Shown: positions 1-42,214, numbered from the stretch's first letter. The stretch: DNA of 43,619 bases from Salpingoeca rosetta (GCA_033442325.1 JAWQFM010000007.1:529968-573586), one strand, 5' to 3'. Notes: generated by a model not told the origin, from the sequence alone. Made by a program: numbers and translations.

Positions 1-2010
1 ATCACCCCGGGCTCAGCCCCGTTGCCGACAACCCGCACCGTCCCCGCGCGCAAGCGTCCGCAGCCGAACCTCCCGTCCAACCCCAAGCTCCATCCGCGTC
101 AGGTCCTCAAACACAGCGCTCACAAACACAGACGCCCGCTGGCCCTCAAAGTCAAGCACGTCCCGCTCAACCACAACAGTCGCCTCCGCGCTCGACCCAG
201 GGTCATTGCCAAGCTCGCTCATGCCGCCGCTCACGCGCACCGCGCTCGCAACAACAACGTCCAGCCCAACAATCCCAACGTAGCTGTCCTGCGCCTCAAG
301 CATCGCCTCGCCGATAACGCGGGACCCGCTCACCGCGGCGCTCAATACGCGCACCACCGTCTGCCCAGCGCCAACGCCCTGCACGTGCCCAGACACAACA
401 GGGTCAACCCGTGCCACGCTCTGGTTCACAACCGCAAGCTGCGACTGCCCCAGCAGCCCGCCCAGGCTCAGCGCTGCGCTCACAGCGTCCCCGCTCCGGA
501 ACCGCCCAACAACGCTCACGCGCGCCCGCTGGAACTGGCTTGTCCCCAGCGACACGCACCCGTCAGACGCATCGTGCCCAGCGTCGCGCTGCCACCGCGC
601 CACCCGCCGCACAACGTCCCGGTCAAGCACTACCTGCACCGGCTCCTCAGGGTACCACACGCGCACCCACACCCGCGCGGACTGCCCGCCATACTCAACG
701 CTCACGCCCACAGACGGCGACCCGCCGCTCTCGGCGCCCGTCACGCGCACGCGCCCGCAGTCAGCATCCGCCAGCAACACGCTCGTGTTCAGGCTCATGC
801 ACGCCAGCCCAGGGCTCCCCGCAGACACAACTGCAAACTGCCCAGGCCGCCAGCTGCTCACAGCACGCACAGAGAGCGCAGACGTCTCCTCGCTCCCGCT
901 CAGCACAGCCGTGTTCACAAGCTCAGCGCGCGCCGCGCTCGCAACAAGCCCAACCACTCGCTCAGGCTCCACAACAACAAATCCGTTGCCGTCACGCGCA
1001 AGCCCGTCGGTAGACCCGTAAGCCCCGCCTCGCCGCACAATCACAGTTGCAGGCTCCGCTCCGCCGCCAACAAGCAGCGGCCGCCGGTCAATGTCGCTCA
1101 GGTACACAGCCCGCACAGACACAAGCGGCTGCACTGCAGCGCTCGTCCCCGCGCCGTCCCGTACCCGCACCACAACCGTCGCAACCGCCTGCTCCTCCGT
1201 TTGTGCATCCTGCGACGCTGTCTTCGGGTCCCTCAGAATGTAGCTCCCAGTCGCGTTCCGCCCATCAGCCGTCACGCCGTACTGGCCCGTCCACACATCC
1301 TCGTCAACCTCAAACCGCACAAGCTCAAGCTCGGGCCCAACAAACAGGCTCGTGCGGAACGTGTTGATCGCACGCTCCGCCTGCACACTGAGTGACACCT
1401 CAAACTCGTCGCCGCTCTTCAGTGATGCCTGCGGCACCCGCGCAATCAGCAAGCCGTTGCTTCCGCTCGGGTCAAACGCGCTCTCGGGCCGCACCAGCAG
1501 CACCTCAGACACGCGCCCCGCGTCCTGGAACCCAGCCGTCAGCGCATACTCCACGCTCACATTCAGCGCGCCGCTGCCGTCGTCCCCGCCGCCGTTCTGG
1601 CTCGCATCAACCGCCGCAGCGTCAGTCACCCACGCCTCAGGCACATCCACAGACGCAATGCACGCGCCCGTCCCGCTGTCCGTGCTGCACGTTCCACTCG
1701 GCATGCTCGTGTCAACCTCCTGCTGCAGCGTCGCCCCGCCAACAAGCCGCACATGCACCGTCGTGCTGCTCGTCCGCGTGCTCCCGCGCGCATCCCGCAC
1801 CTGCACCGCAACGTACACCCTCCGCGAGTCCGGCCACACCTCCCCGGTCAGCAGCTGCGCCTCAACGCTGCTCGCTCCAGCGCGCCCGCGCGAGTACCCC
1901 AGCGATGCAGACAGCGACGCAGCCATCGCGCCAGCGCCCTCGCCCTGGTCAAGCTCAACAGAAACAGACGTGCTCCCGCCAGGCGCCAGGCCCGCTGGGA
2001 AGCCATATCG
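1..2010. repeat. Copy 2 (partial) of a 4938-bp intragenic tandem repeat; near-identical to 4940-6948
   Basis: The same ORF translations recur at offset 4938 (411/5349, 785/5723, 1047/5985). The only differences noticed are a synonymous SNP at 1393/6331 and a 1-nt insertion near 46. Confidence 0.95.
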
Positions 2011-5000
2011 AAACGTCCCGCTCGCGTCCGTGTCGCCACTCGTCACAGGGCTGTCCAGCGAAAGCACAACCCCGCCACTCTGGCCAACGCTTGCCAGCCA
2101 TTCGTCCTCGCTCGTCGTCGGCATCGTAGCGTTGCCGCCCGCACCCGCGCCGTCGCCCACAACCGCAAACGCGCCGCTGCCCTGGGGAACAACGTCCCCG
2201 ACTATCACAGCGCTGCCCGCGGCAATCGCATAGTCCCGGCAATACGTGTTGTTCGACAGCGTGCAAACGCCATCCAGCACCTGCCCGCCAGGACACGGAA
2301 CCACAGCACACAGTCCACTCGCAAGCTTGCAGCTCACGCTGTCAACCGTGTTGTCAAACGTCTGCAGCGGGTTGTACCCTTGTGGCACAGGTGTCTTCAC
2401 AGCCACATCGTCCCCGCCAAACGCGCCAAGCGTAACACTCACCTGGCCCGTGTACGCCTTGGAGCCCTGCGTCCGTCCGCCCATAAACACAAACAGCGCT
2501 TCCGGCGTGTCGCGCGTCACCTGGATCACGCTCAGCCCAATGTCCGTGCGAACCGTCGATACAGGCACGCTCACGCGCCACAGCCCCACGCTCGCATTCA
2601 CAAGCTCAGCCTCAACAATCGCTCCGCTCAGCGTGCCAGACCCTTTGCTCAGCGTCACAAACCGGCCCTCACTGAACACAGACGCGCTCGTGCTCAGCTC
2701 AAGCCCAAGGCTGCTCTCCCCGCTTGTCAAGCCAGCAGGCACGCTGCCGCCCTCAAGGTCAAAGTACACCCGCGTATCAGCGCCAGACGCTGCGCCGTCC
2801 CCCTTATCCAGGAGCACAGCGCTCACCTCAAGCTCACACGCCGTGCCGCTGCTCACAGCCTGCACACCAACACCCGTCACAAACCGCAGCAGCCCAAAGT
2901 TGACCCGGTTCAGGAACGCCGCATCGTCCTCGTTCCGCTCCGTGTTCAGGTCCGCGTCAAGCTCATCGTACGTGTACGGCTTGCTCGCATGCAGCGCAAG
3001 CACAGCCTGCCCACGCGCAGACACAAACTTGAGCTCCTTCTCAACAAGGTACGTCAGCACAAACCGCACATCGCTCACGCCAAACACGCCGTCGCCGTTC
3101 GTGTCGCCCCGCTGAGGTGCCCCCGTGTTGCGGCGCATCCGTCGCCGCGCTTCCGCGTGCGCTTCAACGGCCTCGTCAACCGCAGTTGCCCCAAGCAAAG
3201 CGCCCTGCTTCCCGCTGCCGCTGCCGCTGCCGCTGCTGCTGCTACGGCGGCGGCGCGTGCTCGTCGCCTCAAACGGTACGCGGCCAGCAATAAACGCACG
3301 CTCAGTCCCGCTGCCAATCGCCGTCCCGCTCACATCAGGCTGGCTCAGCGTCACAACAGTCCCACTCAGCACGCTCGACCCGGCACCCACAACACGGAAC
3401 TCAAGCTCAGCAACCTCAAGCGCGCTGCCAGACACACTGTCCCCAGACACTGTCCCGCCAAACTCAACTCGCCCCGCCGTCTGCGCGTTCCGGTCAAACA
3501 GCCCGTTCACACTCGCCGTCGCAGACACAAACTCAAGCACCGTCGTATCAAACATCACCGCAAGCTCGTACGCCCCAAGCGCTGCGCCGCCAGTGTTCAC
3601 GCGCACGGGAACCGTCACCGTCTCGCCCACCCTCAGTGGGCCCACGGCAACCCCGCTCGCAGACCCAATGTCCGCATCCCCAACCTCAGGATCAAGGTTG
3701 CACGCAACACCAACCGTCCCGCGCACCGCACTCCCGCCGCTGCGCCCATCGTCAACAGTCGCCGTCAGCGTCACAACATCTGCCGCGTTGCCTTCCAGGC
3801 GAACTACCCCGCTCCGCGCTCCGATGCTCGCGCCGCTCAGGTCGCTGCTCGAAAACACAACAAGCCCGGGATACAGCGCCTGGCCCCCAGAGAACAGCGT
3901 CGGCAGCACACGCCCGCTGTCAAGCACAGCTCGCATGTCCACCGTCGTCTCCGCGCCAACGCTCCCGCGCAGCGTGCTCCCAGCTGCAACACTAACGCCC
4001 TCCAGCGCAGCCACAACCGCAGCTTCCCGCGTCACATTCACCACAAGGTCCTGCGACGCAGATGTCACGCTGCTCGCGTACTCCAGCCGCAGCTGCACAA
4101 CAAGCGATCCGCTTGTGTTCGTACCGTTCAGCACAGCGCGCCCAGCACTGCTCGTCCCCACGCTCACGTGGTTCTGTGCGGTGCCGCTGCCGCTGCCCGT
4201 CACGCGCGAGATGTCAACAACAGCCTGTCCGCTCACGTCCGACACAAGCGCCCCGCCCTCAAACAGCTGAGCCGACTCCTGTCGCACAGCAAGCGCGCCC
4301 GCCGTCGACACCTCAATCTCCTGTCCGTTGCTCAGCGCAAGATACGCCCGCACCACAAGCGCCTCGTACACCGCCGGCGTCGTCCCAGCAAGCCGGTGCA
4401 GCGTCCGAACAGACACCCCGCTCGACCCGCTGTACGCAGGGTACGGGTTCGCGTCCGCCCGCACACCAACGCCCGCAACAACCGTCACAGACACAGTCGC
4501 GCTCACGTTCTCGTGCATGAAGCTCACCCGGATCACCGCAACAGACCCGGCGCCAAGCTCCCCGGCCTTGCTCGCGTTGGCCACAAGCCGCAGCCCCGTG
4601 CTTCCGCCTTCCTCAAGCGAAACCAGGCCCATCGCCCCGCTCAGGTCAATCAGCGTCCGGTTGTCCTGCGTCGCCGTCACAACACGGTCAGGGTACTCCA
4701 GCTCAACCGTCAGCTCCGCGCTCGTCGCAACGCCAGCAGTCTCAGCCGCGTCCCCCGCAAACGTCAGCCGGCTCGCAGACACCGTCGCCCGCGCTGCATC
4801 AGCAGGTGGCAGTGCAACGCTCACATACCCGCGCCCGCGCACAACCTCAAGCACGCCGCACTCCGCGTTCGCGTTGCCGCCCTGCCAAATCGCTTCAATC
4901 AACTCCCCGCTTCCATCCACCGCGCGCCCAGGCACAACAATCACCCCGGGCTCAGCCCCGTTGCCGACAACCCGCACCGTCCCCGGCGCAAGCGTCCGCA

Positions 5001-8000
5001 GCCGAACCTCCCGTCCAACCCCAAGCTCCATCCGCGTCAGGTCCTCAAACACAGCGCTCACAAACACAGACGCCCGCTGGCCCTCAAAGTCAAGCACGTC
5101 CCGCTCAACCACAACAGTCGCCTCCGCGCTCGACCCAGGGTCATTGCCAAGCTCGCTCATGCCGCCGCTCACGCGCACCGCGCTCGCAACAACAACGTCC
5201 AGCCCAACAATCCCAACGTAGCTGTCCTGCGCCTCAAGCATCGCCTCGCCGATAACGCGGGACCCGCTCACCGCGGCGCTCAATACGCGCACCACCGTCT
5301 GCCCAGCGCCAACGCCCTGCACGTGCCCAGACACAACAGGGTCAACCCGTGCCACGCTCTGGTTCACAACCGCAAGCTGCGACTGCCCCAGCAGCCCGCC
5401 CAGGCTCAGCGCTGCGCTCACAGCGTCCCCGCTCCGGAACCGCCCAACAACGCTCACGCGCGCCCGCTGGAACTGGCTTGTCCCCAGCGACACGCACCCG
5501 TCAGACGCATCGTGCCCAGCGTCGCGCTGCCACCGCGCCACCCGCCGCACAACGTCCCGGTCAAGCACTACCTGCACCGGCTCCTCAGGGTACCACACGC
5601 GCACCCACACCCGCGCGGACTGCCCGCCATACTCAACGCTCACGCCCACAGACGGCGACCCGCCGCTCTCGGCGCCCGTCACGCGCACGCGCCCGCAGTC
5701 AGCATCCGCCAGCAACACGCTCGTGTTCAGGCTCATGCACGCCAGCCCAGGGCTCCCCGCAGACACAACTGCAAACTGCCCAGGCCGCCAGCTGCTCACA
5801 GCACGCACAGAGAGCGCAGACGTCTCCTCGCTCCCGCTCAGCACAGCCGTGTTCACAAGCTCAGCGCGCGCCGCGCTCGCAACAAGCCCAACCACTCGCT
5901 CAGGCTCCACAACAACAAATCCGTTGCCGTCACGCGCAAGCCCGTCGGTAGACCCGTAAGCCCCGCCTCGCCGCACAATCACAGTTGCAGGCTCCGCTCC
6001 GCCGCCAACAAGCAGCGGCCGCCGGTCAATGTCGCTCAGGTACACAGCCCGCACAGACACAAGCGGCTGCACTGCAGCGCTCGTCCCCGCGCCGTCCCGT
6101 ACCCGCACCACAACCGTCGCAACCGCCTGCTCCTCCGTTTGTGCATCCTGCGACGCTGTCTTCGGGTCCCTCAGAATGTAGCTCCCAGTCGCGTTCCGCC
6201 CATCAGCCGTCACGCCGTACTGGCCCGTCCACACATCCTCGTCAACCTCAAACCGCACAAGCTCAAGCTCGGGCCCAACAAACAGGCTCGTGCGGAACGT
6301 GTTGATCGCACGCTCCGCCTGCACACTGAGCGACACCTCAAACTCGTCGCCGCTCTTCAGTGATGCCTGCGGCACCCGCGCAATCAGCAAGCCGTTGCTT
6401 CCGCTCGGGTCAAACGCGCTCTCGGGCCGCACCAGCAGCACCTCAGACACGCGCCCCGCGTCCTGGAACCCAGCCGTCAGCGCATACTCCACGCTCACAT
6501 TCAGCGCGCCGCTGCCGTCGTCCCCGCCGCCGTTCTGGCTCGCATCAACCGCCGCAGCGTCAGTCACCCACGCCTCAGGCACATCCACAGACGCAATGCA
6601 CGCGCCCGTCCCGCTGTCCGTGCTGCACGTTCCACTCGGCATGCTCGTGTCAACCTCCTGCTGCAGCGTCGCCCCGCCAACAAGCCGCACATGCACCGTC
6701 GTGCTGCTCGTCCGCGTGCTCCCGCGCGCATCCCGCACCTGCACCGCAACGTACACCCTCCGCGAGTCCGGCCACACCTCCCCGGTCAGCAGCTGCGCCT
6801 CAACGCTGCTCGCTCCAGCGCGCCCGCGCGAGTACCCCAGCGATGCAGACAGCGACGCAGCCATCGCGCCAGCGCCCTCGCCCTGGTCAAGCTCAACAGA
6901 AACAGACGTGCTCCCGCCAGGCGCCAGGCCCGCTGGGAAGCCATATCGGAGCGTTCCTGTGAGTTTGCTGTGCACATCTGTGTGATTTTCTGGGCTTGTT
7001 GGAATGATGCCATTGTCTACGGTGACGTGGAAGGCGCCGATGCTTGTGCTCACGTGGACAAGAGCCGATGCGTTGTATCCGACTGTGAATAATTGTGTGT
7101 GTGAGCGTTAGCATGTGATGAGAATGTAATGACGCAAGGAGTTGTAACATCGACAGGTGTACTTGGAACATGATTTAGCAATGAAAACTCGAACATTCCC
7201 ATCTCTTCATGAGTTGTACATGCATGTGTGTGCATGTGTTTGCATGTGCGTGTTCGCATGCAAGCTCGTGCGGCTCTCACCTCTACAGGTTGTGTCGGAT
7301 GTGGGTGTGCACTCCTGATCGACGAGGAAGCCAGGCTTGCACTCAGAGCAAGGGGAGCACGTGCGTTGCTTGTGCCTTGCGACGAAGCGGAGGGCTGCGA
7401 ATGTGACTTCGTTGCCGAAGAAGTTTTCCGTGTTGATGTGCGTGTCCCTGTTCTCGATGAGGAACGTGATGGGAACGAGCGCATCTGCAGTGATGGTGCT
7501 GAGGGTGTACCAGCCTGAGGAGGGGATGGTGCGCTGGTCGATTTCCAGGCTGATGGTGCGAAAAGGTGTGGTGATGGTTATGGGGACGTTGGTTGCTGCG
7601 TTTGTCTGTGCCTTGTAGGCGATTTCAACGTCATACACGCCAGGGTCGAGCATAGCGGATGCGTTGAGGTACACGTCGCCCTTGTTCTCGTCATTGTCGG
7701 TGAGGTAGGAGGCAAAGTCACCCGCCTGTTCGTTGACGCGCACCCACGGTCCCACAGCCGTGATGTGGGTGCTGTCAATGTCCAGCGTTGTGGTTGCATT
7801 GATGGCATCTGCGGCAATGTAGAGCTCACACTGCTGGGTACGATAGGAGCCATCTGGGCACTGGGCACACAAACTCTCGCACTGGCGGTCCGAGGTTGGT
7901 GTTGGTGCCATTGTCTGTATGGTGAGGTCGTGGCAGCCCGGCAAGACTGGCCGACAGTCTCTGTCTGAAGTTGGTGTTGGAGGTGTGTGCTCGTACTCGC

Positions 8001-9697
8001 CCGATGCGCACGTCGTGAGGTTTGCGCACTGGCGGTCTGTGGTCAGGGTTGGTGCGGCAACCTCGTACTGGGCGCTAGAGCAGGACGAGAAGGCCGTACA
8101 CACGCATTCTGGCCCGATGAACTGGCCTTCGCCGCAGGTGGGCGGCTGGGTGCACGGCTGGCAGATGATGGGCAGCTTGGCGGCATCAAGGCGAAGCTCG
8201 CGAAAGGTGACTGCGCTGCCAAAGTCGATGCCAAGGTTTGAGCTGTCCCTGTTCTCGATGAGGAAGGAGGCACCGGCGTCGTCGATGTAGAAGGTGCCGA
8301 GGGTGTGGAAGCCGGATGGGTCGATGGTGGACTGGTCCACGCGGGTGGAGAAGTTACCTGTGGCGTGGGTGAAGGAAACAGGCACGCGGGTGGATGCCGT
8401 GACAGACATGGCTGCGTACGAGAAGGAGACCTTGTAGAGGCCAGGGCGCACGGTGACGTTGATGCGCAGCTCTACCAAGCCCTTGTTGTCGTTGTTGTCG
8501 CTGAGGTACTGCACGTTGTTCTGGGTGATGGTAACCCAGGGACCAGTGATGTCGAAGGTGGCGCTTGCGGTGTTGGCCAGCTCTGGCAGCGGCGGCGTGT
8601 TGTCCTGGGATGCGAGCGTCTGCGTGAGGGCGTTGGCAAGCAGCGCACCGGAGGCGCCAGTGTCATCACAAGGGTAGCGTGTTTCCGAGTTTGGCGCACA
8701 GGCGTGGCAGTAAGGTCTGCACATGGTGTTGGAAGTTGGGGTGGCGACAACGGCTTCGTATGTGTTTGTGGTGTTGCACGCTGTGACGGGTTCACAGTCG
8801 ATGTCAGTGGTGCGGGTAGCCTCCTTGCTGACGAAGAAGCCCGGATCACACTGGGACACGTTTGCGCACGCGGCATCTGAGGTGAGGGTTGGCGGCACCT
8901 TCTGGTACAAGCCCATGTCAAGGCTGCAGTCTGTGATGTTGCTGCAGACGCGGTCGGAGCTTGAGGTGCAGGGCGCGGCCACAAACTGGGTGGTGGAGCA
9001 GATGGTGCTGCACGGGGAGCAGTCTGCGTCCACGGTAGCTGCCTGGATGAAGACGCCGTCGACAAAGACAAAGCTGCCGAAGAAGTTGTCGTTGTCCAGG
9101 TGCGTGCGCTCTGTGGAGACGGTGACGTTGATGTAGGACGTGGCCCTCAAGCTGGCAGAGAGGAGTGTTCCACCGACGCCGTCTGTGAAGTTTGCGCTTG
9201 TCTGCTCGCGCTGGTCGACGTAGACGAGGGTCGTCTCTGTGCTTGCGTCGGAGGTGATTCTGACGGGCACGCGAGAAGCAGCGACGATGCTGAGCGGGTG
9301 CAGGAGAGCCACGCTGTAAGTGCCTGGGGCAAAGACGCTGACGACCATGGTGATGACTTTTGTGCCTTTGCCCATATCATCGTCGCTGTAGTAGAAGGCG
9401 CCAAGGAAGTTTGATGGCGGCTCTGGACTTGACGGCTGTGGTGAAGCGACAATGGCCCAGTTGCCGGTGATGGTTGCCGTGCTGCTGGTTGCGTCCACGA
9501 CGATGGTTGTCTCGTTGGATTGAAGGGCAGCGGCGCAAGCCTCCTGGCTCACGAACCGGCCATCCGGGCACTGGCTGCACTCGTACCCAAGCGCCACTAT
9601 TAGCGTGCAGTGTGTTGTGAGTGTATGTGTGTGTTTGGGGAGGGGGGGGGGGTTGTGGGTTGTGTTTCGTGTGTGTGTGAGTGTGTGTGTGTGGGTT

Positions 9698-9736
<39 letters not shown>

Positions 9737-10169
9737 TGTGTGTGTGTGTGTGTGTGTGTTGTGTGTGTGTTATGTGTTGTTTGTGTGTGTGGCGGGGGTG
9801 TATTGTGAGGCGTACAGGACACGTATGTGCGTGAGTGTTGTGGCTGAATCAAAATTGGCCAGCAAGCCAAGTCAATGAGGAGACACCCCCCGCTCAATGC
9901 ATCATTGGCCCACATGCGACGACGCACAGCCACAACAATTGCTCCAGCCACACAATCACGCGTGCGCGCACACACACACACACACAAACATACACAAACA
10001 CAAGCACAAACACCATCACCCCTGCACAATCACACTGTGCACACGACAGCTGACCTGGTGTGGAGGCCAGGTTGCATGCGGCGAGGATGAAGATGAAGAT
10101 GAATGCCGTGAAGGTTGGTGTGAGTGCCCGCCGATGCCTGCAGGCACGTGCCTGCCATTCGTGTGTCAT
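1..10169 (-). CDS. Giant secreted multidomain polyprotein, 3'-partial (>3100 aa in window): signal peptide, 3x golvesin/Xly CBM-like domains, TNFR-like Cys repeats, then tandem TMEM132-like/cohesin/dockerin units
   Basis: Hand-spliced, phase-consistent GT-AG exons: 10169(or 10196)-10055 (donor CCAG|GTCAGC), 9596-7281 (acceptor ATAG|, donor AGAG|GTGAGA), 7082-<1 (acceptor CACAG|). Exons 1+2 join to give a signal peptide, FTAFIFIFILAACNLASTPVALG-YECSQC. ORFs 7207..10029 and 13..7053 supply the body. The apparent stop at 13 follows a 1-nt insertion near position 46. Confidence 0.85.
2890..3108 (-). other. Dockerin (type I-like) domain
   Basis: Duplicated Ca-loop/helix motif: GDTNGDGVFGVSDVRFVLTYL ... 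DADLNTERNEDDAAFLNRVNFG. Confidence 0.75.
3270..3640 (-). other. Cohesin domain
   Basis: VGETVTVPVRVNTGGAALGAYELAVMFDTTVLEFVSA...VAELEFRVVG matches the cohesin consensus GxTVxVPVxV....(F/Y)DxxVLE(F/V)...LxFxV. Confidence 0.75.
4810..6948 (-). other. TMEM132-like ectodomain module (N region, cohesin-like domain, tandem BIG/Ig domains), repeat unit 1
   Basis: ELVNTAVLSG..LACMSLNTSVLLADADCGRVRVTGAE..VRVWYPEEPVQVVLD..VARWQ..QFQRARVSVVGRF..FEGQRASVFVSAVFED parallels the remembered metazoan TMEM132 motif order LVNTAILTG..VECxSxD..CDY..TVWVPRLPLQIEVSD..IKGW..QYQHAxVRVLTQF..QEA..WVQFSD. Confidence 0.75.
7378..9505 (-). other. Three golvesin-C/xanthan-lyase CBM-like beta-sandwich domains (~9505-9043, ~8565-8187, ~7795-7378) interleaved with TNFR-like Cys-rich repeats
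   Basis: Motif repeated three times: G(N/P)W...Y(L/Y)xDxDxxKG...PGxYxVx(L/F/I)x(Y/H)....A(S/T)xxVP(V/I)...(V/I)DQ. The spacers carry CxxxxC..PTxTSDxxC repeats. Confidence 0.7.
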
Positions 10170-19480: not shown

Positions 19481-22400
19481 TCTCTCTCACCCACCCACTC
19501 ACTCACTCACTCACTCACTCACTCACAGACTTGCGCCCACCCAAGCACATGCCTTGAGCCGTACCAGTGGACAGCGACACATTGTTGGCGACGTGGCTGC
19601 ACGTGAGATTCGTCAGTGCAAGGCTGTGCACGGGAACGCTGGTGCTGTTGCTGATGCTCAACAGCACCAGTTCAGCAACAGCGTCGAGGGCGTCGCACGA
19701 CATGTTCCCAGCACGCTCACGCGCCAGCTGTAAGGTCAGAGGCACTCGCTGAAACGACGTCCAGTTGCGTTGGCCGCAAGCCCCACACCAAGCGAGGCGT
19801 GGCCCCGATGTGTCTGAGCCCGGGGCACCATCAGACCCGGTCTCATCACCATACACGCGCAGCGTCTCTGCAGAGGCAACAAGCAAGTGCGGTGCTGTTG
19901 CTGCTGGCACGTGTGGTGGAGCTGGCACTGCTGGTGGTGGCGATGCACCACACAGGCTGCCACCGACGTTGTGCAGCGGCGGAAGCAGGGGGTGTGCGCA
20001 AACGCCCGACAATAAGGAAGGCGCATGTGCAACGCGGTACCCATCCAGCCACAGCCCAGCTCCAAAGTCTGGGCCAATGGTGACGGCAATGTGAAACCAC
20101 AGCGTTCCCACATGTGGCGCAGACGCCAGATGAAAGACGAGCGTCTGTGAGACGTGACGTGTTGGGGCTGACGTGTCTTGCAAGATAGCATCAAACAGGC
20201 TTGCTCCAACGGCTGGGGTGCGGCCGTCATGAATGCGCACTGCCTCGTGAAACACAACCCGCTTTGTTTCGACGTCCAGCGTGAGCCGCGCAGCCGTATC
20301 CCAACGCGAGCGGTTCAAGGAGGTGCAAGATCCACCGAACAGCGCCAGCTGTAACGCCCCGCTCGACGCTGTGGCCATGCCCCCAAGGACAGGAAGAATG
20401 CGGGCTGAATATGAAGGCATAGCTGGGACTTGGGTGCTTTGCACTACTGGAACAGTCACCTTCGCCCACATGCCAAATGCACGGATTGTAGCAGCGACAG
20501 CAGAAGAGGCAGCAAGCTCTGGCGTTGCGGTGAGGGCCGTGTTTGGAGATAAGACAACATACGGCTGCCCAACAGAAAACGGATTCACAGTTGACGTTGA
20601 CGCGTTCTGCAGCAGCAACGTCGTGTCAATGCGCTGCACAACCAGCGAAGACGTGTGACGTGCAATCGACGGGCCCGTCGTGCTGTCACGCGTGCTGAAC
20701 GAGCGCAGGAAAGCGGGCGCGAGGGTGCCTGCAGCCAACGGCAGCAGCTGCTCTGGTGGCACAACTTGCACACCCACAGCAGAAGACCGGGTGGGGAGCT
20801 GGACTCGTTCGTCCCCGCGTTCACCGAGTGGGACGCTCGCCCACGTTACTCTGTCCTCAAGTGCATCGTCGATGACAGCAAACGCTGCCGTGCTCAGCGG
20901 TAAGGGAGCAGTGTCCGTCCGCAGGCGCACGCACACAGCAAAGTGCTGCAACTGCGCCCGTGTCTGCACCAGCGACGCTGACGCCAAAGACACAGCACGC
21001 GCGCGTGCAACGATCCCTGATCGGGTGAAGGTGACAAACCCGCTCACGGTGGACGCAGTCAACATGGCAGCGTACGTTTCTGAGGTTGACAGCACGGCAA
21101 AGACAGCCACGCCATCACCAGCGCTCGCGGCGGTGTCAATCGACAGCGTCGTCGTTATGACCAGCGCGTGCGTGTACATTCCGCGTCCACAGCTGTGCTC
21201 AACAGCTGGCAGAGCACGCCTGCGCCGTGATGATGCCTGTGGCGCGAGCGCAATGAGCTCAGCGCCCACGATGAGCGGGCGGTCTTGTGTGATGGCGTCT
21301 GTCACATCAGCGACCACGGCCAGTGATGGGGCCTCGGTTCGCCCCTGCACCAGCGGTAGCCGTAACCCGCACATGCCAGCAAAAAACGATGGATGGAAGT
21401 GCCAGCAAAGAAACGCTGCAACATCTGCACCGTCACGCCGACAGCTGCGACCAGAGCCCGTGGTGCTGGTTGTGCTGCTGCTGCTACTACTGTTGCTACC
21501 GGTGTGCTCGTTCACGTCCAGCACGCACCGTGTCATTGTTTGCCCGCTGTCGCCAGCTTGCGATACTGCACGCCTTTGTCGTTGATGCGGCTGCTGGTGG
21601 TGGGTTTGTTGCTGTGGATTCGCAGCTGAGGACGACACCAGTCGAATTGGCAGCGAAGTCGACACGAGGTCCTGTCGAAATAAGGCAGACGCACTCATGC
21701 TGCTGCTGGTATTGTTGTCTGAATCCAGTGGTTGTGAGCGCACAATGTCCACAGATACATGCGCGGAGACTGCAGTGAATTCTGATGGTGATGGTTGTGG
21801 CTGTTCAGCACTGGCGAATGCAAGTCCCAGAACCCGAACCAGCCCCGCGCGAGGGGCAGCAGCAAGCACGAGCACGGCTTCCACTCGCCCAGCTGCGTTG
21901 CACTGTGTCATGTTCCTTGACCGATATATGAGCGGTATGCCCTCAGCCTCACCACCCGTCGCATCGCACCACCACGTATGGCGTACGGGTTGCATGCTGC
22001 CAGGTGGTACAAACACTTCAACAAGTTGAAGTGACGCTGGGTCGAAGGCTACGGAAGCCGAGTACACTGCGCCGACAGCCGCACTCAGGCTTGGCTGTTC
22101 AAACGCCAACACCATGCCTAACGTCGACGGTGGCGGTGGTGGTGGTACTGGTGCTGTTGTTGTCGGTGGTGGCGCTGTCGTTGCTGTTGTCGTTGCTGTT
22201 GTGGTTGCTGCTGGGGGCGGTGTTGTTGAAGACGACAAGACGGCGGCAGATGCAGGCCAGGGACCGAGATTGCCCCCGCCCCCACCGCCGCCAGCAGGCA
22301 CATCAGTGCCGTCACCGCTGCCGTTCATTTCTTCAGCTGCAGTTGTTCCAGGGGACAAGGGAATGGAGGTGGATGGGAGAAGCCACGTGGGACGAAAGAG

Positions 22401-23250
22401 GCGATGGGGTGCAAATACGGCAAGTGGCAGGCGGGCAAACGTGCCAACAGCACTGGGCGGTGTGGGCGACACCATCTCGTTCGCAGCGACAACAGCAATG
22501 GTGATGATCGGGTACAAGTGTGCAGAGATTGGCGGCGGCAAGCGCAGGGCTGCCGTTTGCGTGTCGCTTGAGACCAGCAAGTACATCTGATCCTCTGCCC
22601 TGTATGGGCGCAGCGCCAGCCCAAGTGCGGGCTGCAGGGCGCGGATGCTGGCAGTGATGTGCGTGCCGTCCGAGAACATAGCCGTCGCCAAGGGCAGAGG
22701 AAGCGGCTTTGGCTCTCCAACGTCAGCGACAAAGGCAAGTGTAGTGTCACCCAAGTGAGGCTGCAGGTGCACAAGTGTCGTTGGTCCTGCAATGGTGGAT
22801 GGCTCAGGAACGACCTGCACATCAGCGACAACAGCGGACGAGCTTGCGCCTGTCATGCGAACACTGATCACAACTGACTGTTGCTGCTGAAATGAGCCAC
22901 CAGTGTGGGTGAGGAGGAGCGCGTCAGGTAATGTTGACTGGGGCGATGGCGTCGATGCAGGAACAGAGGCGGTGCCGGGTGCTGTCGTTGCAGTATCCTG
23001 CGAGAGCGGCGTGGACGTGATGGAGAGAACGCTGGATGCAACGGACACATCCAAGTTGGACATGGGCAGCGCAACGCACCCTTGCTGTTGTGGGTCACAA
23101 TTGCCCGCAAGCAAGCAATCGTCATTGGCGCTGGTGTTGCTTGCGGCAACGACGCACGCGACCACACGCAAGAGCACTGGTCGTAACCGCATGTCCGGGG
23201 ATGCCTGCGGTTGTGAAGAAGGAACTGCAACCACAGGCCACTGAAACAAT

Positions 23251-23286
<36 letters not shown>

Positions 23287-25352
23287 TGAGCGAGAGGAGG
23301 GTTCAGCTGGCTGAGCGGGATGTGTGGTGGCAAGGGCAATGCCCAGGACACTGACAAGTGCGGCACGACTTGCGTGTACACGCTGTCAAGACGAGCGGAA
23401 GCCGTATGCACGCCTTCAGCTGTGTGCAGCTCAAATGTCATGGTGATGTCGCCTGCACACGGCAGCATCGCAGAAACGCGGGCAACCGTTGTTGGCGTGA
23501 TGGTCCTCGCGGCTGTGGATGAGGCGACGTGGTCCATGACGGAGGGGAATTGCTGGGGGTTGTCGGTCGTGTCCAAACCCTCGCCGTTTGCACCACTGCC
23601 CTCAAGCTCAACGTGCACTGCATCAGCGCAAGCGCCGTTTACTGCGGTGATAATGACGGAGTTGATGTTGGGAAGCGTGGCGTTTGCAAACAAGCACGTC
23701 TCCTCTTCCACCCGCACAACGTCTCGTGCCAGCGCAGGTGGTGCAACTCCGATTGTGCGCGCGGATGACTCGAGTGTCAAGTGCTGACGCAACGGAGGCG
23801 TTGGTGTGGCTGCTTGTGTGGATGCGGTTGCATTTGTGTTGATGGGGGTGGTCGTCGGTGTTGTGAAATTGGCGGCACCGCTGCTGCTGCTGCTGCTGCT
23901 GCTGTCTGCGCTTGCTGTTTGTACATAGATGGTGCGAGCTGTCAGCAGCAGTGTCTGCGCGGGATCGCTGGTGGTGCTGGTCAAGTGCACGAGCAAGCGC
24001 GCGCGGACGGTGGCACCAACATCTGCAGGTGGTGGTGGTGGTGGTGGTTGTGGTGAAGCCTCAGGGGCGATGGCGACGGCAAGCGGAAGACCCACGCTGG
24101 ACGTGGAGGGTGCCAGCACCAAATGGGGCATGGGCTCCACTGCGTCGGACACAGTCAAGGTCAAGCGAAGACGATGAGACGGCAGCAAGCGCGCCGGCTC
24201 AGCACCGACACGCGCCACCACAAACACAACATACTGCATGCGAGGCACGAGCGTTGATGTTGCCGTCGTAAGGCCGGCTGCGATGGTGGCCAGCGCGGCT
24301 GTTCGCGGCTGCTGTTGCTGCTGCTGATTGTCCTCGAGGGGGCATTCACCGTTGGATGACGATGCTCCCGGAAGCAAGCAGGCGCGAAGTGCGGCTTGCG
24401 TCGTGCCCAGTGCTGGAAAGGCAACGGCAGTGATTGTACTTGGTACTTGGGGCTGGGATGGGCGTAGTTGCAGATGCAGAGCGGCAAGTGACTGTGATTG
24501 GGAATCATTCGGTGCGGAGGGCAATGTCACCTGCACCTCAGGCGTTCCCGAGTGCTGCAGGAAAGAGTCATTGAGTGCTAGCACCGCATCGGCCCCTGTT
24601 TGCATCGTGATGGTGGCGCTGGTTGCTGGAAATATGCGCAATAACGGCAACACGTCTTCCGTGATATCACAGGGTACTGCACGGAAGCTCTCTGTGTCAG
24701 TGTCTTTGCTGCCGTCGTTGCTGTTGCTGTCATCTTTGCTGCTGTCGTTGCTGCTGTCGTTGCTGCTGCTGCTGTTGTTGTTGTTGTTGTTGCTCCTGTG
24801 GTGGCTGCTGCTGAGCTGCGGAAAAGTGGCTTCCACCCACACGGGGATCACCGGCCACACCATTTGCTGAAAATCCAACGTCTCAAGCAGTAGCGGGTGT
24901 GCTGCTGCGACTGCTGCTGCTGTCCCAGTGGTGTGGTTGCTTGCAGCGTCCATGCCACCACCGGTGGCATTGAGAGGGCTGGGTGAGGGTGTGCGGATGG
25001 CGACGTGCACGGGCTGGACAACGCGTACGGTGACGGCGGCTCGTGCCAGGTCACCTTGCAACACAGATGCAGCGACAGTGGATGAGTTGCGCACACGGAT
25101 GGTGGCGTTGATGGTGCCCCCGAACCCGACTGGAATGCGCAACTGCAAACACGACTGCGTTTCGTCTGTGTAAGTCGTGTTGCATGGTGGGGCCGACGCC
25201 ACATGCGCGCTGGTGTCGCGGCATGCTGTGATGGCACAGGAGAGCGGAATCGCTGCAGCACCGGCAGTGTCGAGATGACGCCTCAGGATTGGCAGCGACG
25301 AGTCATCGTCATCATCATCGTCATCACCAACAGCTTCATCATCATCATCATT

Positions 25353-25386
<34 letters not shown>

Positions 25387-27701
25387 GCATCAGCATCAAC
25401 AGCAGCAGCATCATCATCGTGAACAGCAGGAGCAGCATCATCTCTGTTTGTGCTGTTGGAGAGGATAATGTGCCACTGCGACTGCACATGATCAAAGGCA
25501 ACAAAACACGATGCACCGTCTGCCTCGCTCCAGATGTGAACTCGCACAGCGAGAAGGATGGGTGGATCGCTGCTCCCCGTGATGCTGCTGATGGACTGGA
25601 CGTATGGTGACCCCAGCACATGCGCGTGAAAGTGCAGTGGAACCAGTGGCTGAGTCTGTTGGCGTGCGACAAACAGCGGAGCGGAACGCGCTGCTGCGCC
25701 GCCAAGCTGTACCAGTGTTGGTGAAGCTGAACCAGCATTTGGTCTGGGTGCTGCTGCTGCTTCATGAGACAGGATATCGAGAAGGGTCACATGAGCGATG
25801 GAGAGCGGCGATGGTGGTGTTGCGGGGGAAAGGGATGACACGTTGGTGTCAATGGTGACGAACTGCACACGTTGTTGATGTGACCGCCACCGCTCAAGGT
25901 GGAGGTACAGGGTAACAGCTGGTGTTGCAGATGACAGCATGGCGGTTGCGGTGTGCGAGCACACGTCAGCGTCTGTTGTGCCTGTGATATTTTGCAGAGG
26001 GGGAGGGAGGTCGCTCATGACACGGCGCCTGCGTTGCTGCGGCGTCAAGTCTGTCCATGCAGCAACACCAAAGAAGGCGCGAAAGGCGGACGCTGCCTGG
26101 GCAACAACAGGTGACGCGCCCCAACAGCCAGCTGATGCGTGCACACGCACGAGGACAGCGCCACCTCCAGTGAGGGCCAATACGCCTGTACGTGACAGAT
26201 TGAGGCGAACAGTTATGCTGCCTCTGCCTCCTCCTGCTTCTAGTTTGCGTTGCGTCACGGCAACAACAGATGGGTGCGGTGCAGTGGCGCTGGCGGTGGA
26301 TCCAAGTACCGCTTCTGGATGGAGGAGGGCAGCCCGGATGTCCTGAGACTGCGCGCACCAGAGCTGTAGCGGTGTCACGTCCACGGTGACGTTGAGATGC
26401 ACACCAGCAATACGAGGTGATGCTGTGGGGCTGGTCGACGTGGTGGTGGTGGTGGCTGTGTACGACGGAGACGGGAGGTGAAGCGCCCAGTGCGCAGAAA
26501 ACGGCGTAAAGGCGGTTGTCGTGGCCGTGCCGACAATAGCATGTGGTGTGCATGGGGGCGCGCCGCTTTGCACCGTGAGCGAGCAGTCCACGCGCCGAGA
26601 TGATGATGATACGGGACGTGCGCGTGGCAATTGGAATGCTGGCGCACATGTTGCTCGCAGGCACGTTGTGTCGGACGTAGGATCGCATAGGACCACGGCG
26701 GGCAGCGAGGTGCTGTTTGTGAGTGCGAGGAGCGCGGGCGCAACGACGAGGCTGAATGCCAGGCGGACATGATCTTGCGACGTCTGAAGGATGCGCACGG
26801 CAGGGTCCACGAGTTGCACCTGCGCGGTGTTGCTATTGCTTTCATTCTTGGCATTGGCAGAGCTGGAAGGTGGAAGCTTGGCAAGGGTGCTTGCGAGCTG
26901 ATGGCGCTGGCGCTGTCCAACGTAAGCCAAGGGAACGTCGCCGATTGCCAGCGACACGGTGGTGGAAGAAGAAGCAGACGAAAGTGATGAAGACGAAGAC
27001 GAAGAGGACGGAAACGAAGACGAAGACGAAGGAAAGAGGGCGTCGGGGTCTGAGATGATGATGGTGGTGGGTCGAAGGGTGAGGCGATTTCCGGGAACAA
27101 AGACTGATGGGTTCGTCACCGCCATTGGGAGCCTCTTGCGCCGCTTCAAGGCGGCGAAGCGATCCTCTTTTGGTCCCGTGGAGGTCGAGGAGGAGGCCCC
27201 GGGTGTGCATGGTGCCGCTGCTGAAGGCGGTTGCGGAGAGTGTGTGGCCGAGGAGAGCAGCTCCTGGATGGAGAGCAGGTCTTGGCGAGGCCAGGTTGTG
27301 TGCAGCGTGGCAGGGAGGTATTGCAGTGTTGATTCATAGTCGCTGGTGACGCAGATGGCTGTTGAAGAGCAGAAGCCGAAGCCGGCCGACGCGGTGTGGC
27401 AGAGATCGTTCACTGGGGCGGGCCCAACAGGGGCGCAGGTGTCATCCGGCATGCACAGGCCGCGCACGCACGATCTCCATGTACACGGGGAGAAGGCAGG
27501 CCTGCCTGCGCATTGTGCTGCGGCAGAAGCTGCGCTTGCGATTGGTGATGCTGGGAGGATGGCCAGGAAGAGCAGGAGGGAGCCTACAACGTAGCCTGCT
27601 GCAACTGTGACAAACCCACCAGCAGGCACCACGGCCACCAGCACCACAGCTGTTCGCCGTTCATCGCTGCCGCTTCTTGCTCCTGTTAAGGAGCAGGCCA
27701 T
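17820..27701 (-). CDS. Very large (~3030 aa) single-pass membrane protein: diverged TMEM132-like ectodomain, cohesin-like/RxRR/dockerin-like segment, LamG-like domain, TM helix, disordered cytoplasmic tail
   Basis: Exons 27701-19565, 19181-19060, 18919-18720, 18465-17820 (GT-AG, in phase, 9105 nt). Hydrophobic N-terminal leader (YVVGSLLLFLAILPASPIASA). TM segment WVTLVLILALIIALIVAIILLA is followed after splicing by RRKKR. LWFHIAVTIG...LWLDG is LamG-like. C-terminus is ...YASTHF*. Confidence 0.75.
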
Positions 27702-28166
27702 TGAGTGAGGGCTTGAAGCGCAGGGAGGCGCTGGGTGGGTAGATTGCGTGTTTGGGTGTTTGGGTGTTTGGGTGGTTGGCTGTTGTGTTCGGTTGGTTGT
27801 GGGTGTAGAGGTTGGCGAGGTCGCGAAGCACAACAGCAGCGGTGGAGCGAGCTGCTTGCAGGCAAGCAAACAACAGCCGTGTTGAGATGCGCATTTGCGA
27901 CACCACAAACTGTGGTGAAACCAAGGGGCACAATTCGCCGCTTTGTGTGTTGTTCTCGACGACCACTGGCTGGCGCAACTCGACGACCCTCTCCAGCCCC
28001 TTGTGCTTTGTGCTTTGTTGTTGTGTGTGGTTGCAGCCACGCACTTCTGCACTTGTCACATCAAACACTGCTGTGCCACTGCTTGATAAGTGAGCATTTT
28101 TTTCCCAAAGCACCCTTCCTCTCCTCCTTCTCTCTCCCCATCTCACCACCGCTCCCACCCCTCGCG
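27702..28166. promoter_or_regulatory. Short divergent intergenic region (putative bidirectional promoter) between the TMEM132-like membrane protein and the GREB1-like gene
   Basis: Head-to-head ATGs at 27701(-) and 28167(+) with 465 bp between them. Confidence 0.45.
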
Positions 28167-41587: not shown

Positions 41588-42214
41588 NNNNNNNNNNNNN
41601 NNNNNNNNNNNNNNNNNNNNNNNNNNNNNNNNNNNNNNNNNNNNNNNNNNNNNNNNNNNNNNNNNNNNNNNNNNNNNNNNNNNNNNNNNNNNNNNNNNNN
41701 NNNNNNNNNNNNNNNNNNNNNNNNNNNNNNNNNNNNNNNNNNNNNNNNNNNNNNNNNNNNNNNNNNNNNNNNNNNNNNNNNNNNNNNNNNNNNNNNNNNN
41801 NNNNNNNNNNNNNNNNNNNNNNNNNNNNNNNNNNNNNNNNNNNNNNNNNNNNNNNNNNNNNNNNNNNNNNNNNNNNNNNNNNNNNNNNNNNNNNNNNNNN
41901 NNNNNNNNNNNNNNNNNNNNNNNNNNNNNNNNNNNNNNNNNNNNNNNNNNNNNNNNNNNNNNNNNNNNNNNNNNNNNNNNNNNNNNNNNNNNNNNNNNNN
42001 NNNNNNNNNNNNNNNNNNNNNNNNNNNNNNNNNNNNNNNNNNNNNNNNNNNNNNNNNNNNNNNNNNNNNNNNNNNNNNNNNNNNNNNNNNNNNNNNNNNN
42101 NNNNNNNNNNNNNNNNNNNNNNNNNNNNNNNNNNNNNNNNNNNNNNNNNNNNNNNNNNNNNNNNNNNNNNNNNNNNNNNNNNNNNNNNNNNNNNNNNNNN
42201 NNNNNNNNNNNNNN
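41588..42214. other. Assembly gap (N run)
   Basis: 627 consecutive N. Confidence 1.

What the first reader, a model, noticed from the sequence alone, without database searches (positions are those of the whole stretch)
2890..3640. Cellulosome-type cohesin and dockerin separated by furin-type sites inside a eukaryotic secreted polyprotein
Seen: a cohesin (3640-3270), then TRRRRSSSSGSGSGSG and ARRRMRR/N (two R-x-x-R polybasic sites, ~3257-3130), then a two-loop dockerin (3108-2890). Established: cohesin-dockerin pairs are the Ca2+-dependent, high-affinity assembly code of bacterial cellulosomes, and R-x-(K/R)-R is the furin/kexin consensus. Inference: cleavage within each 1646-aa unit would release protomers with an N-terminal dockerin and a C-terminal cohesin. 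These could stay non-covalently linked or re-polymerise head-to-tail, forming a self-assembling, Ca2+-dependent extracellular filament or matrix (theca, stalk, colony ECM or adhesive). Cohesin domains are known in choanoflagellate cadherins, but I know of no described cohesin-cleavage-dockerin polymer system.
Basis: partly seen in the sequence, partly recalled or inferred. Interest (0 to 1): 0.92.

Follow-up and report, generated by a model that had tools for sequence, protein, structure and literature searches.

The report
Cut-and-hold cohesin-dockerin joint in choanoflagellate protein
A giant surface or secreted protein of the choanoflagellate Salpingoeca rosetta carries a bacterial-type cohesin and dockerin joined by a floppy linker with two convertase-type cutting sites. 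The same cassette is conserved in about 20 paralogues, other choanoflagellates and a sponge, so these proteins are probably cut and then held together by a calcium-dependent snap joint.

Summary
On the minus strand, window 3256-3690 is a cohesin: Pfam gives 38-40 bits against a cut-off of 24.1, and the top 30+ fold matches are solved cohesins. Window 2881-3129 is a two-loop dockerin. This copy misses Pfam Dockerin_1, but 13 of 16 paralogues hit it, and the paralogue profile hits solved dockerins at E=3.6e-7. The pLDDT-92 model has dockerins as its 27 best fold matches.

The two domains are joined by a disordered 42-aa linker. It holds the only two R-x-[KR]-R sites in the 2346-aa frame.

The cassette recurs at 18 other places in this genome and in 167 modules of 124 database proteins, including Sycon ciliatum. 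Such sites are about 186 times denser in the linker than in the rest of those proteins. The genome encodes a convertase. A complex test supports cohesin-dockerin binding (0.86, best control 0.00).

Cleavage and binding are inferred, not shown. Only one module of this gene is assembled, because the second unit runs into an 18.7-kb gap. The filament idea is less likely than a cut-and-hold joint.

The scan has already noted this cassette on other DNA of the same genome. I found no paper describing it.

The parts
3256..3690 (-). Cohesin domain (145 aa), module residues 1-145
   Evidence: Pfam PF00963 scores 38-40 bits against a cut-off of 24.1. The AF2 model has pLDDT about 90 here. The Foldseek top 30+ PDB matches are all cohesins, for example 2jh2_B at E=4e-8.
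3244..3255 (-). First polybasic site, RRRR followed by S, directly after the last cohesin strand
   Evidence: Translation. The R column is invariant in 14 paralogues. Profile positions 148-151 are R in 49-72% of 167 modules. pLDDT is below 50.
3148..3243 (-). 32-aa spacer between the two sites, low-complexity and non-conserved. It is the candidate excised peptide.
   Evidence: The AF2 model has pLDDT below 50 over module residues 146-169 and 180-189, which covers most of this spacer. Length and sequence are not conserved among paralogues. The whole linker has a median of 37 aa and a range of 19-107 in 167 modules.
3130..3147 (-). Second polybasic site, RRRMRR followed by N (R-x-R-R consensus)
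   Evidence: Translation. The RR is invariant in 14 paralogues. R is found in 69, 77 and 84% of sequences at profile positions 179, 181 and 182 of 167 modules.
2881..3129 (-). Dockerin-like domain with two Ca-loop-plus-helix repeats (loops at 3070-3105 and 2923-2958). This copy lacks the Cys motif CPCxC...GDC seen in most relatives.
   Evidence: Loop positions 1 and 12 are invariant in both loops. Paralogue profile against PDB: 4dh2_B E=3.6e-7 and 4fl4_A E=3.6e-6 with both loops aligned. 13 of 16 paralogues hit Dockerin_1. The AF2 model has pLDDT 91.9, and its 27 best Foldseek matches are all dockerins with TM by target up to 0.83.
16..7053 (-). Host reading frame (2346 aa), part of gene PTSG_03507. 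It contains TMEM132-type Ig domains (about 5215-5889) upstream of the module. The 3' end is lost in an assembly gap.
   Evidence: The public gene model ends where the window sequence stops matching its own repeat, next to the 18,756-N gap.

Best explanation
This is one copy of a conserved eukaryotic cassette: cohesin, then a disordered linker with two proprotein-convertase sites, then dockerin. The likely sequence of events is as follows. The precursor enters the secretory pathway. A furin/kexin-type convertase cuts after RRRR and after RxRR and releases the spacer of about 32 aa, in the way the C-peptide is released from proinsulin. The cohesin, now a C-terminus, and the adjacent dockerin, now an N-terminus, stay bound to each other through the canonical Ca2+-dependent type-I interface. 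The chain thus becomes non-covalently joined subunits. This joint could be force-bearing and calcium-sensitive and could allow shedding, functionally like Notch S1, GAIN or SEA junctions. Shown here: the domain identities, the motif conservation and the presence of a convertase gene. Inferred: cleavage, Ca2+ binding, binding in cis, and the biological role.
For: The domains are identified. The full 287-aa cassette recurs at 18 other places in this genome at 30-43% identity, inside open frames of up to 7568 aa. An exhaustive profile search gave 300 cluster representatives at E<=1e-30, most covering the whole profile. R-x-[KR]-R clusters number 2.79 per 100 aa in the linker, 0.0025 in the flanking domains and 0.015 in the rest of the 150 proteins. 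121 of 167 modules have at least one cluster and 67 have two or more. The sponge Sycon ciliatum and transcriptome-derived S. urceolata proteins keep both sites. S. rosetta encodes a Peptidase_S8 plus P-domain convertase. The linker has pLDDT below 50 between two well-folded domains, and the single-chain pTM is 0.73. Complex test of cohesin, 2 Ca and dockerin: ipSAE 0.86 with best control 0.00. That mark was reached by 51 of 78 solved complexes and 2 of 108 mismatched pairs. The runs agree in at least 97% of contacts and the partner pLDDT is at least 76. The interface uses the helices after each Ca loop. Many relatives have one membrane-proximal module, which fits a heterodimer joint.
Against: There is no direct evidence of cleavage, Ca2+ binding or binding. 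The complex pass may reflect the model's memory of solved cohesin-dockerin complexes, and it cannot tell which cohesin is the true partner. This copy fails Pfam Dockerin_1, lacks the family's cysteines and has a longer insert between the loops. 46 of 167 modules lack a strict R-x-[KR]-R site, and a haptophyte homologue has degenerate sites. RNA evidence for this locus could not be obtained. The RRRR/SSSS stretch is low-complexity sequence.
Confidence: 0.58

Rival explanations
1. After cleavage, the internal protomers (dockerin...cohesin) exchange partners and dock in trans, head-to-tail or between different cassette-bearing proteins. The result is a Ca2+-dependent filament or matrix, a cellulosome-like extracellular assembly code.
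For: Paralogues carry 2-4 modules per chain, 1332-2785 aa apart, so doubly ended protomers would exist. More than 20 cassettes in one genome give many potential partners. The modelled binding is between separate chains.
Against: Strict 1:1 adjacency of cohesin and dockerin, with a linker long enough for cis binding, is what a pre-formed intramolecular pair predicts. Most family members have one module, and many are membrane-anchored. The predicted interface positions are as variable among paralogues as the rest of the domains (entropy 1.93 vs 1.89 for the dockerin, 2.17 vs 1.93 for the cohesin). That speaks against one shared promiscuous interface, though it proves nothing. Only one module is assembled for this gene.
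Confidence: 0.15
2. The chain is not normally cut. The cohesin and dockerin form an intramolecular clasp, a structural or elastic element. The polybasic motifs would then serve another purpose, such as binding sulfated glycans, or cleavage only during regulated shedding.
For: 27% of modules lack a strict site. Bacterial single-chain proteins with cohesin plus dockerin exist without such sites (clusters).
Against: The consensus is specifically R-x-[KR]-R rather than general basic charge. It occurs twice at fixed positions flanking a variable spacer and is about 186 times enriched. This is the signature of convertase processing with excision.
Confidence: 0.17
3. The two domains are decayed relics that no longer bind each other. 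The dockerin-like part is merely an EF-hand-like Ca-binding spacer.
For: This copy has no Pfam Dockerin_1 hit. Its own PDB matches are marginal, E=0.021 and 0.11.
Against: The Ca-ligand positions are invariant, F203 is invariant and F270 is conserved in at least 90% of paralogues. The model is confident and dockerin-like. The complex score is 0.86 against 0.00 for controls.
Confidence: 0.06

Closest known systems
Bacterial type-I cohesin-dockerin pairs (cellulosomes, and non-cellulosomal pairs such as those of Clostridium perfringens glycoside hydrolases)
   Same: Both domain folds and the duplicated Ca-loop-plus-helix dockerin are the same. The predicted interface uses the two dockerin helices against one cohesin sheet. 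Single-chain bacterial proteins with cohesin plus dockerin also exist.
   Different: The host is eukaryotic. The pairing is 1:1 within one chain, not a scaffoldin with many cohesins plus enzymes bearing dockerins, and no enzyme cargo is present. A conserved double convertase site lies between the domains. Most family members carry an extra Cys motif before and inside loop 1, but this copy does not.
Furin-processed or autoproteolytic non-covalent junctions of animal surface proteins (Notch S1 heterodimerisation domain, GAIN domain of adhesion GPCRs, SEA domain of mucins, processed Fat cadherin). This comparison rests on general knowledge.
   Same: A precursor is cut in the secretory pathway and its halves stay together non-covalently, often near the membrane. 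Family members here include cadherins, a 7TM receptor and a protein annotated 'notch-1'.
   Different: The holding device would be a cohesin-dockerin pair, unrelated in fold to HD, GAIN or SEA domains. There are two cuts that excise a spacer, rather than one cut inside a folded domain.
TMEM132 architecture and coherin-type cadherins of choanoflagellates and sponges (PMC6030884)
   Same: The host protein has TMEM132 fourth and fifth Ig domains. Relatives combine these with cadherin repeats and a cohesin. Cohesins in choanoflagellates and sponges are already on record.
   Different: That paper states that dockerin homologues are not detectable in vertebrates and describes no dockerin partner or cleavage sites. 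The cohesin here is a second, canonical one, C-terminal to the TMEM132 block and paired with a dockerin. This gene has no cadherin repeats.
Proinsulin-type excision of a connecting peptide between two dibasic sites (general knowledge)
   Same: Two convertase sites bracket a variable, disordered spacer, and the flanking parts remain associated.
   Different: The association would be non-covalent through Ca2+ and cohesin-dockerin binding, not through disulfides.

Membership tests
Cohesin (PF00963) | Sequence match above the curated Pfam cut-off | tested here: met
   35-40.4 bits against 24.1.
Cohesin (PF00963) | Beta-sandwich cohesin fold | tested here: met
   The AF2 model has pLDDT about 90 over residues 20-140. 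The top 30+ Foldseek PDB matches are cohesins, with E down to 4e-8 and TM by target up to 0.76.
Dockerin type I (PF00404) | Sequence match to the Pfam model | tested here: inconclusive
   This copy has no hit at E<=10. 13 of 16 paralogous domains hit, with best E=3.4e-6. The relative P0019 passes the cut-off at 28.1 against 22.9 bits. The paralogue profile hits about 30 solved dockerins, best E=3.6e-7.
Dockerin type I (PF00404) | Two duplicated segments, each a 12-residue Ca-binding loop with acidic or amide ligands at positions 1, 3, 5, 9 and 12, followed by a helix | tested here: met
   Loops DTNGDGVFGVSD and DADLNTERNEDD. Positions 1 and 12 of both loops are invariant. Helices 18-32 and 67-77 follow the loops. 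Position 9 of loop 1 is G here. The spacer between the repeats is longer than in bacterial dockerins.
Dockerin type I (PF00404) | Dockerin fold | tested here: met
   The model has pLDDT 91.9. Its 27 best Foldseek PDB matches are all dockerins with probability up to 1.00 and TM by target 0.58-0.83. E-values are weak (0.07-2.5), as expected for a small domain.
Dockerin type I (PF00404) | Ca2+-dependent binding to a cohesin | not testable with these tools
   Only a model is available: ipSAE 0.86, best control 0.00, and the mark was reached by 51 of 78 solved and 2 of 108 mismatched pairs. The pass may come from memory of solved complexes.
Proprotein-convertase (furin/kexin) substrate | R-x-[K/R]-R motif in an exposed, disordered segment of a secretory-pathway protein | tested here: met
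   There are two motifs and both are in the linker, which has pLDDT below 50 at both motifs and over most of its length. The motif is about 186 times enriched in the family's linkers. The annotated protein has an N-terminal hydrophobic segment, but the signal peptide was not formally predicted.
Proprotein-convertase (furin/kexin) substrate | A convertase is present in the organism | tested here: met
   Four P-domain loci were found. The L027 frame has Peptidase_S8 plus P_proprotein.
Proprotein-convertase (furin/kexin) substrate | Cleavage observed | not testable with these tools
   This needs proteomics or N-terminal sequencing.
Cellulosome system | A scaffoldin with several cohesins that recruits separate dockerin-bearing enzymes | tested here: not met
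   One cohesin and one dockerin sit side by side in one chain. Pfam finds no catalytic domain in the host protein.
Coherin-type cadherin | Cadherin repeats together with a cohesin | tested here: not met
   PTSG_03507 has no Cadherin hit. Relatives P0019 and Sycon P0040 do have one.

The most novel reading that the evidence does not exclude
The 20-odd cassette-bearing surface proteins of S. rosetta, and their sponge counterparts, use convertase cutting plus cohesin-dockerin docking as a general, exchangeable extracellular assembly code. Cut protomers would re-dock in trans to build matrix, theca or cell-cell links. The joints would act as calcium- and force-sensitive fuses, a pre-animal functional counterpart of Notch S1 or GAIN junctions built from bacterial cellulosome parts.
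Probability: 0.15. Interest if true: 0.9.

Novelty: new variant of a known kind. Interest (0 to 1): 0.76.

Why it matters
Cohesin-dockerin is among the strongest known non-covalent protein links and has been treated as a bacterial device for assembling enzymes. Here it appears as a conserved, apparently convertase-processed joint inside giant adhesion-type proteins. These include TMEM132-like proteins, cadherins, a 7TM receptor and a protein annotated 'notch-1', and they come from the closest relatives of animals and from a sponge. If the joint is real, it supplies the dockerin partner that the TMEM132/coherin literature could not find. It adds a third structural solution, beside GAIN/SEA and Notch HD, to the cut-but-held design of surface receptors. 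It also makes a question about pre-animal adhesion and mechanosensing directly testable in a genetically tractable choanoflagellate.

Tried and rejected
1. Pfam Dockerin_1 on this copy alone gave no hit. I resolved this with paralogue profiles.
2. phmmer of this copy against PDB gave only marginal dockerin hits, E=0.021 and 0.11.
3. The RNA check failed. The look-up of sequencing runs listed no holder on record as RNA; the holders are only guessed to be RNA. No read evidence was therefore obtained.
4. I looked for the 3' end of the gene across the gap. The far side (L025) holds an unrelated ankyrin-repeat gene, so the C-terminus is unknown.
5. I tested whether the predicted interface residues are more conserved than the rest, as a promiscuous polymer would predict, or more variable. 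There was no clear difference, so this does not decide the matter.
6. Peer et al. 2009 (PMC3035643) and Nichols et al. 2012 (PMC3420208) are not held. Their content is cited only through PMC6030884.
7. Searches for cohesin+dockerin+furin, dockerin+choanoflagellate terms and PTSG_03507 found no description of the cassette.
8. The second large ORF in the window (19515-28052, minus strand), said to repeat the arrangement in degenerate form, has no Pfam hit and did not appear in the genome search. I did not count it as a member.

Full report
**What is there.** The window is G000:C7:529968-573586 of a 55.4-Mb, 68-contig genome. The finding lies in a 2346-aa minus-strand open frame, window 16-7053. 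A word-indexed protein search matched this stretch at 100% identity to Salpingoeca rosetta PTSG_03507, a 3207-aa protein annotated as 'hypothetical protein'. The organism is therefore the choanoflagellate S. rosetta.

Pfam on the frame finds TMEM132 fourth and fifth Ig domains. It also finds a Cohesin domain at 35 bits against a cut-off of 24.1, or 38-40 bits when the segment is scanned alone. The annotated protein also has three Golvesin_C domains and TNFR cysteine repeats at its N-terminal end, after a hydrophobic segment.

**Coordinates.** The positions were checked by translation:
- Cohesin: 3256-3690.
- First site, RRRR followed by S: 3244-3255.
- 32-aa Ser/Gly/Ala-rich spacer: 3148-3243.
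- Second site, RRRMRR followed by N: 3130-3147.
- Dockerin-like domain: 2881-3129, with two 12-residue loops at 3070-3105 and 2923-2958.

R-x-[KR]-R occurs only twice in the whole 2346-aa frame, and both occurrences are in this 42-aa linker. Composition shuffles predict 0.88 per frame.

**Is the dockerin real?** This copy alone does not hit Pfam Dockerin_1. Against PDB sequences it gives only marginal hits, although the two best are true dockerins at E=0.021 and 0.11. Family-level evidence settles the question:
- A search of the genome itself with the 287-aa module found 18 further places matching nearly end to end at 30-43% identity. They lie inside open frames of up to 7568 aa, several per frame at a spacing of about 5 kb.
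- In the alignment of 14 paralogous modules, the invariant columns are one R of the first site, the RR of the second site, positions 1 and 12 of both Ca loops, and one conserved Phe.
- A profile of 16 paralogous dockerin parts hits solved type-I dockerins. 4dh2_B scores E=3.6e-7 and 4fl4_A scores E=3.6e-6 with both loops aligned. About 30 of the 40 listed matches are dockerins.
- 13 of the 16 dockerin parts hit Pfam Dockerin_1 individually, with best E=3.4e-6.
- An AF2 model of the window's dockerin has pLDDT 91.9. Its 27 best Foldseek PDB matches are all dockerins, with TM by target up to 0.83 for 3ul4_B. The E-values are weak, as expected for so small a domain.

The cohesin part of the module model has pLDDT near 90, and its top 30+ matches are solved cohesins. 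The linker (module residues 146-189) has pLDDT below 50 over residues 146-169 and 180-189, which include both cutting sites.

**Are the polybasic motifs meaningful?**
- An exhaustive profile search of 1.84 billion representatives gave 7496 hits at E<=1e-3 and 300 at E<=1e-30. Most of the top hits span the whole profile. The proteins reach 7984 aa and show up to 12 matched stretches, and full cassettes number up to four per protein.
- I extracted 167 full modules from 124 of the top 150 proteins. Profile positions 148-151 are R in 49-72% of them. Positions 179, 181 and 182 are R in 69, 77 and 84%.
- The GD of loop 1 is present in 98-99% of modules, and both position-12 aspartates in 100%. Most members also have a CPCxC motif before loop 1 and a Cys inside it, which this copy lacks.
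- R-x-[KR]-R clusters occur at 2.79 per 100 aa in the linker. The figure is 0.0025 in the flanking domains and 0.015 in the rest of the same proteins. 121 of 167 modules have at least one cluster and 67 have two or more. Linker length varies from 19 to 107 aa, with a median of 37.

Two fixed sites bracketing a variable, disordered spacer is the pattern expected for convertase processing with excision of the spacer. S. rosetta has the enzyme: four P-domain loci were found, and one frame carries Peptidase_S8 plus the P domain.

**Who has it?** The named members are:
- S. rosetta PTSG_01972, a variant protein, and a protein annotated 'notch-1'.
- The choanoflagellates S. urceolata and Barroeca monosierra.
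- The calcareous sponge Sycon ciliatum (XP_065196373.1, 'mucin-3A-like'), a cadherin- and TMEM132-containing protein that keeps RRRR-S and RHRR-S.
- A Pavlovales haptophyte, whose sites are degenerate.

Relatives combine the cassette with cadherins, Kunitz, LDL-A, ankyrin or a secretin-type 7TM domain. 94 of the 124 proteins have a single module. By a crude hydropathy scan, 55 of 124 have a membrane-like segment after the last module, often 180-1200 aa downstream and near the C-terminus.

It gave ipSAE 0.86 (median of three runs) with a best control of 0.00. That mark was reached by 51 of 78 solved complexes and 2 of 108 mismatched pairs. The runs agree in at least 97% of contacts and the partner pLDDT is at least 76. 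The interface uses the dockerin helices after each Ca loop (residues 17-26 and 70-80) against cohesin strands.

The tool itself warns that families with solved complexes can pass from memory, and that a pass does not say which family member is the partner. The single-chain AF2 model has pTM 0.73 despite about 70 disordered residues. This is compatible with the two domains packing in cis, but I could not inspect the coordinates.

**Most likely mechanism.** The precursor is cut at both sites in the secretory pathway and the spacer is lost. The neighbouring cohesin and dockerin remain latched in a Ca2+-dependent way. A single chain thus becomes non-covalently joined subunits. This fits the strict 1:1 adjacency, the linker lengths and the many single-module, membrane-proximal cases. 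In those cases the product would be a heterodimer like processed Notch, Fat or GAIN-containing receptors.

Paralogues with 2-4 modules would provide them, so it is not excluded. It has no specific support, however. The predicted interface positions are neither more nor less conserved than the rest.

**Limits specific to this locus.** The '1646-aa unit' rests on one complete unit plus a 1963-nt copy (window 48-2010 = 4986-6948, one mismatch). That copy ends at an 18,756-N gap immediately before the window. The public gene model stops there on junk sequence, and the far side of the gap holds a different gene. Only one module of this gene is visible, the number of units is unknown, and the C-terminus (secreted or anchored) is unknown.

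No RNA-read evidence was obtained. 

**Novelty.** Cohesins in choanoflagellates and sponges, and the TMEM132 architecture, are published (PMC6030884). That paper notes that no dockerin homologues are detectable in vertebrates, and it describes no dockerin partner or processing sites. Bacterial single-chain proteins with cohesin plus dockerin exist. Full-text searches found no paper linking cohesin, dockerin and furin-type processing, and none naming this gene. Two key older papers could not be read.

The scan has already noted and followed up the same cassette at other loci of this genome. My results agree with those notes but were obtained independently here. I class the finding as a new variant of known kinds: cohesin-dockerin pairing, and cut-but-held surface proteins.

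Noticed in passing
G000:C7:511212-529967 (immediately before window position 1); window 1-47: An 18,756-N gap abuts the window. The first 47 bases of the window do not match the repeat and create the stop that ends the public gene model PTSG_03507. The gene is therefore truncated by the assembly, and the tandem-repeat count is unknown.
   Followed up: partly
window 19515-28052 (-): A second giant ORF (2845 aa) has no Pfam hit. Around 21000-22300 it has a weakly cohesin-like stretch, a QRQRR-A motif and an SRRRR-A motif, but no recognisable Ca loops. It was not recovered by the genome search with the module, so it is at best a very degenerate relative.
   Followed up: partly
window 7207-10029 (-), via protein P0032 residues about 85-860: The N-terminal part of the same gene has three Golvesin_C (carbohydrate-binding-like) domains interleaved with TNFR-type cysteine repeats.
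   Followed up: no
P0100 (Pavlovales sp. CCMP2436, KAJ1626334.1): A haptophyte protein carries the full cohesin-linker-dockerin module, but its basic sites are degenerate (ARRL, QRRRL). This could be a wider eukaryotic distribution, a transfer or contamination. It was not resolved.
   Followed up: no
P0034 (S. rosetta protein annotated 'notch-1', 6376 aa): The cassette sits at residues 6063-6319, only about 50 residues from the annotated C-terminus. That suggests another truncated gene model.
   Followed up: no
window 41588-42214: A 627-N run, a second assembly gap, lies inside the window.
   Followed up: no
   Followed up: no
L015 (C12:51015-51830) and L016 (C5:1866041-1866856): Two cassette copies on different contigs are nearly identical at the protein level, with a few changes confined to the spacer. 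This is either a very recent duplication or an assembly duplicate.
   Followed up: no
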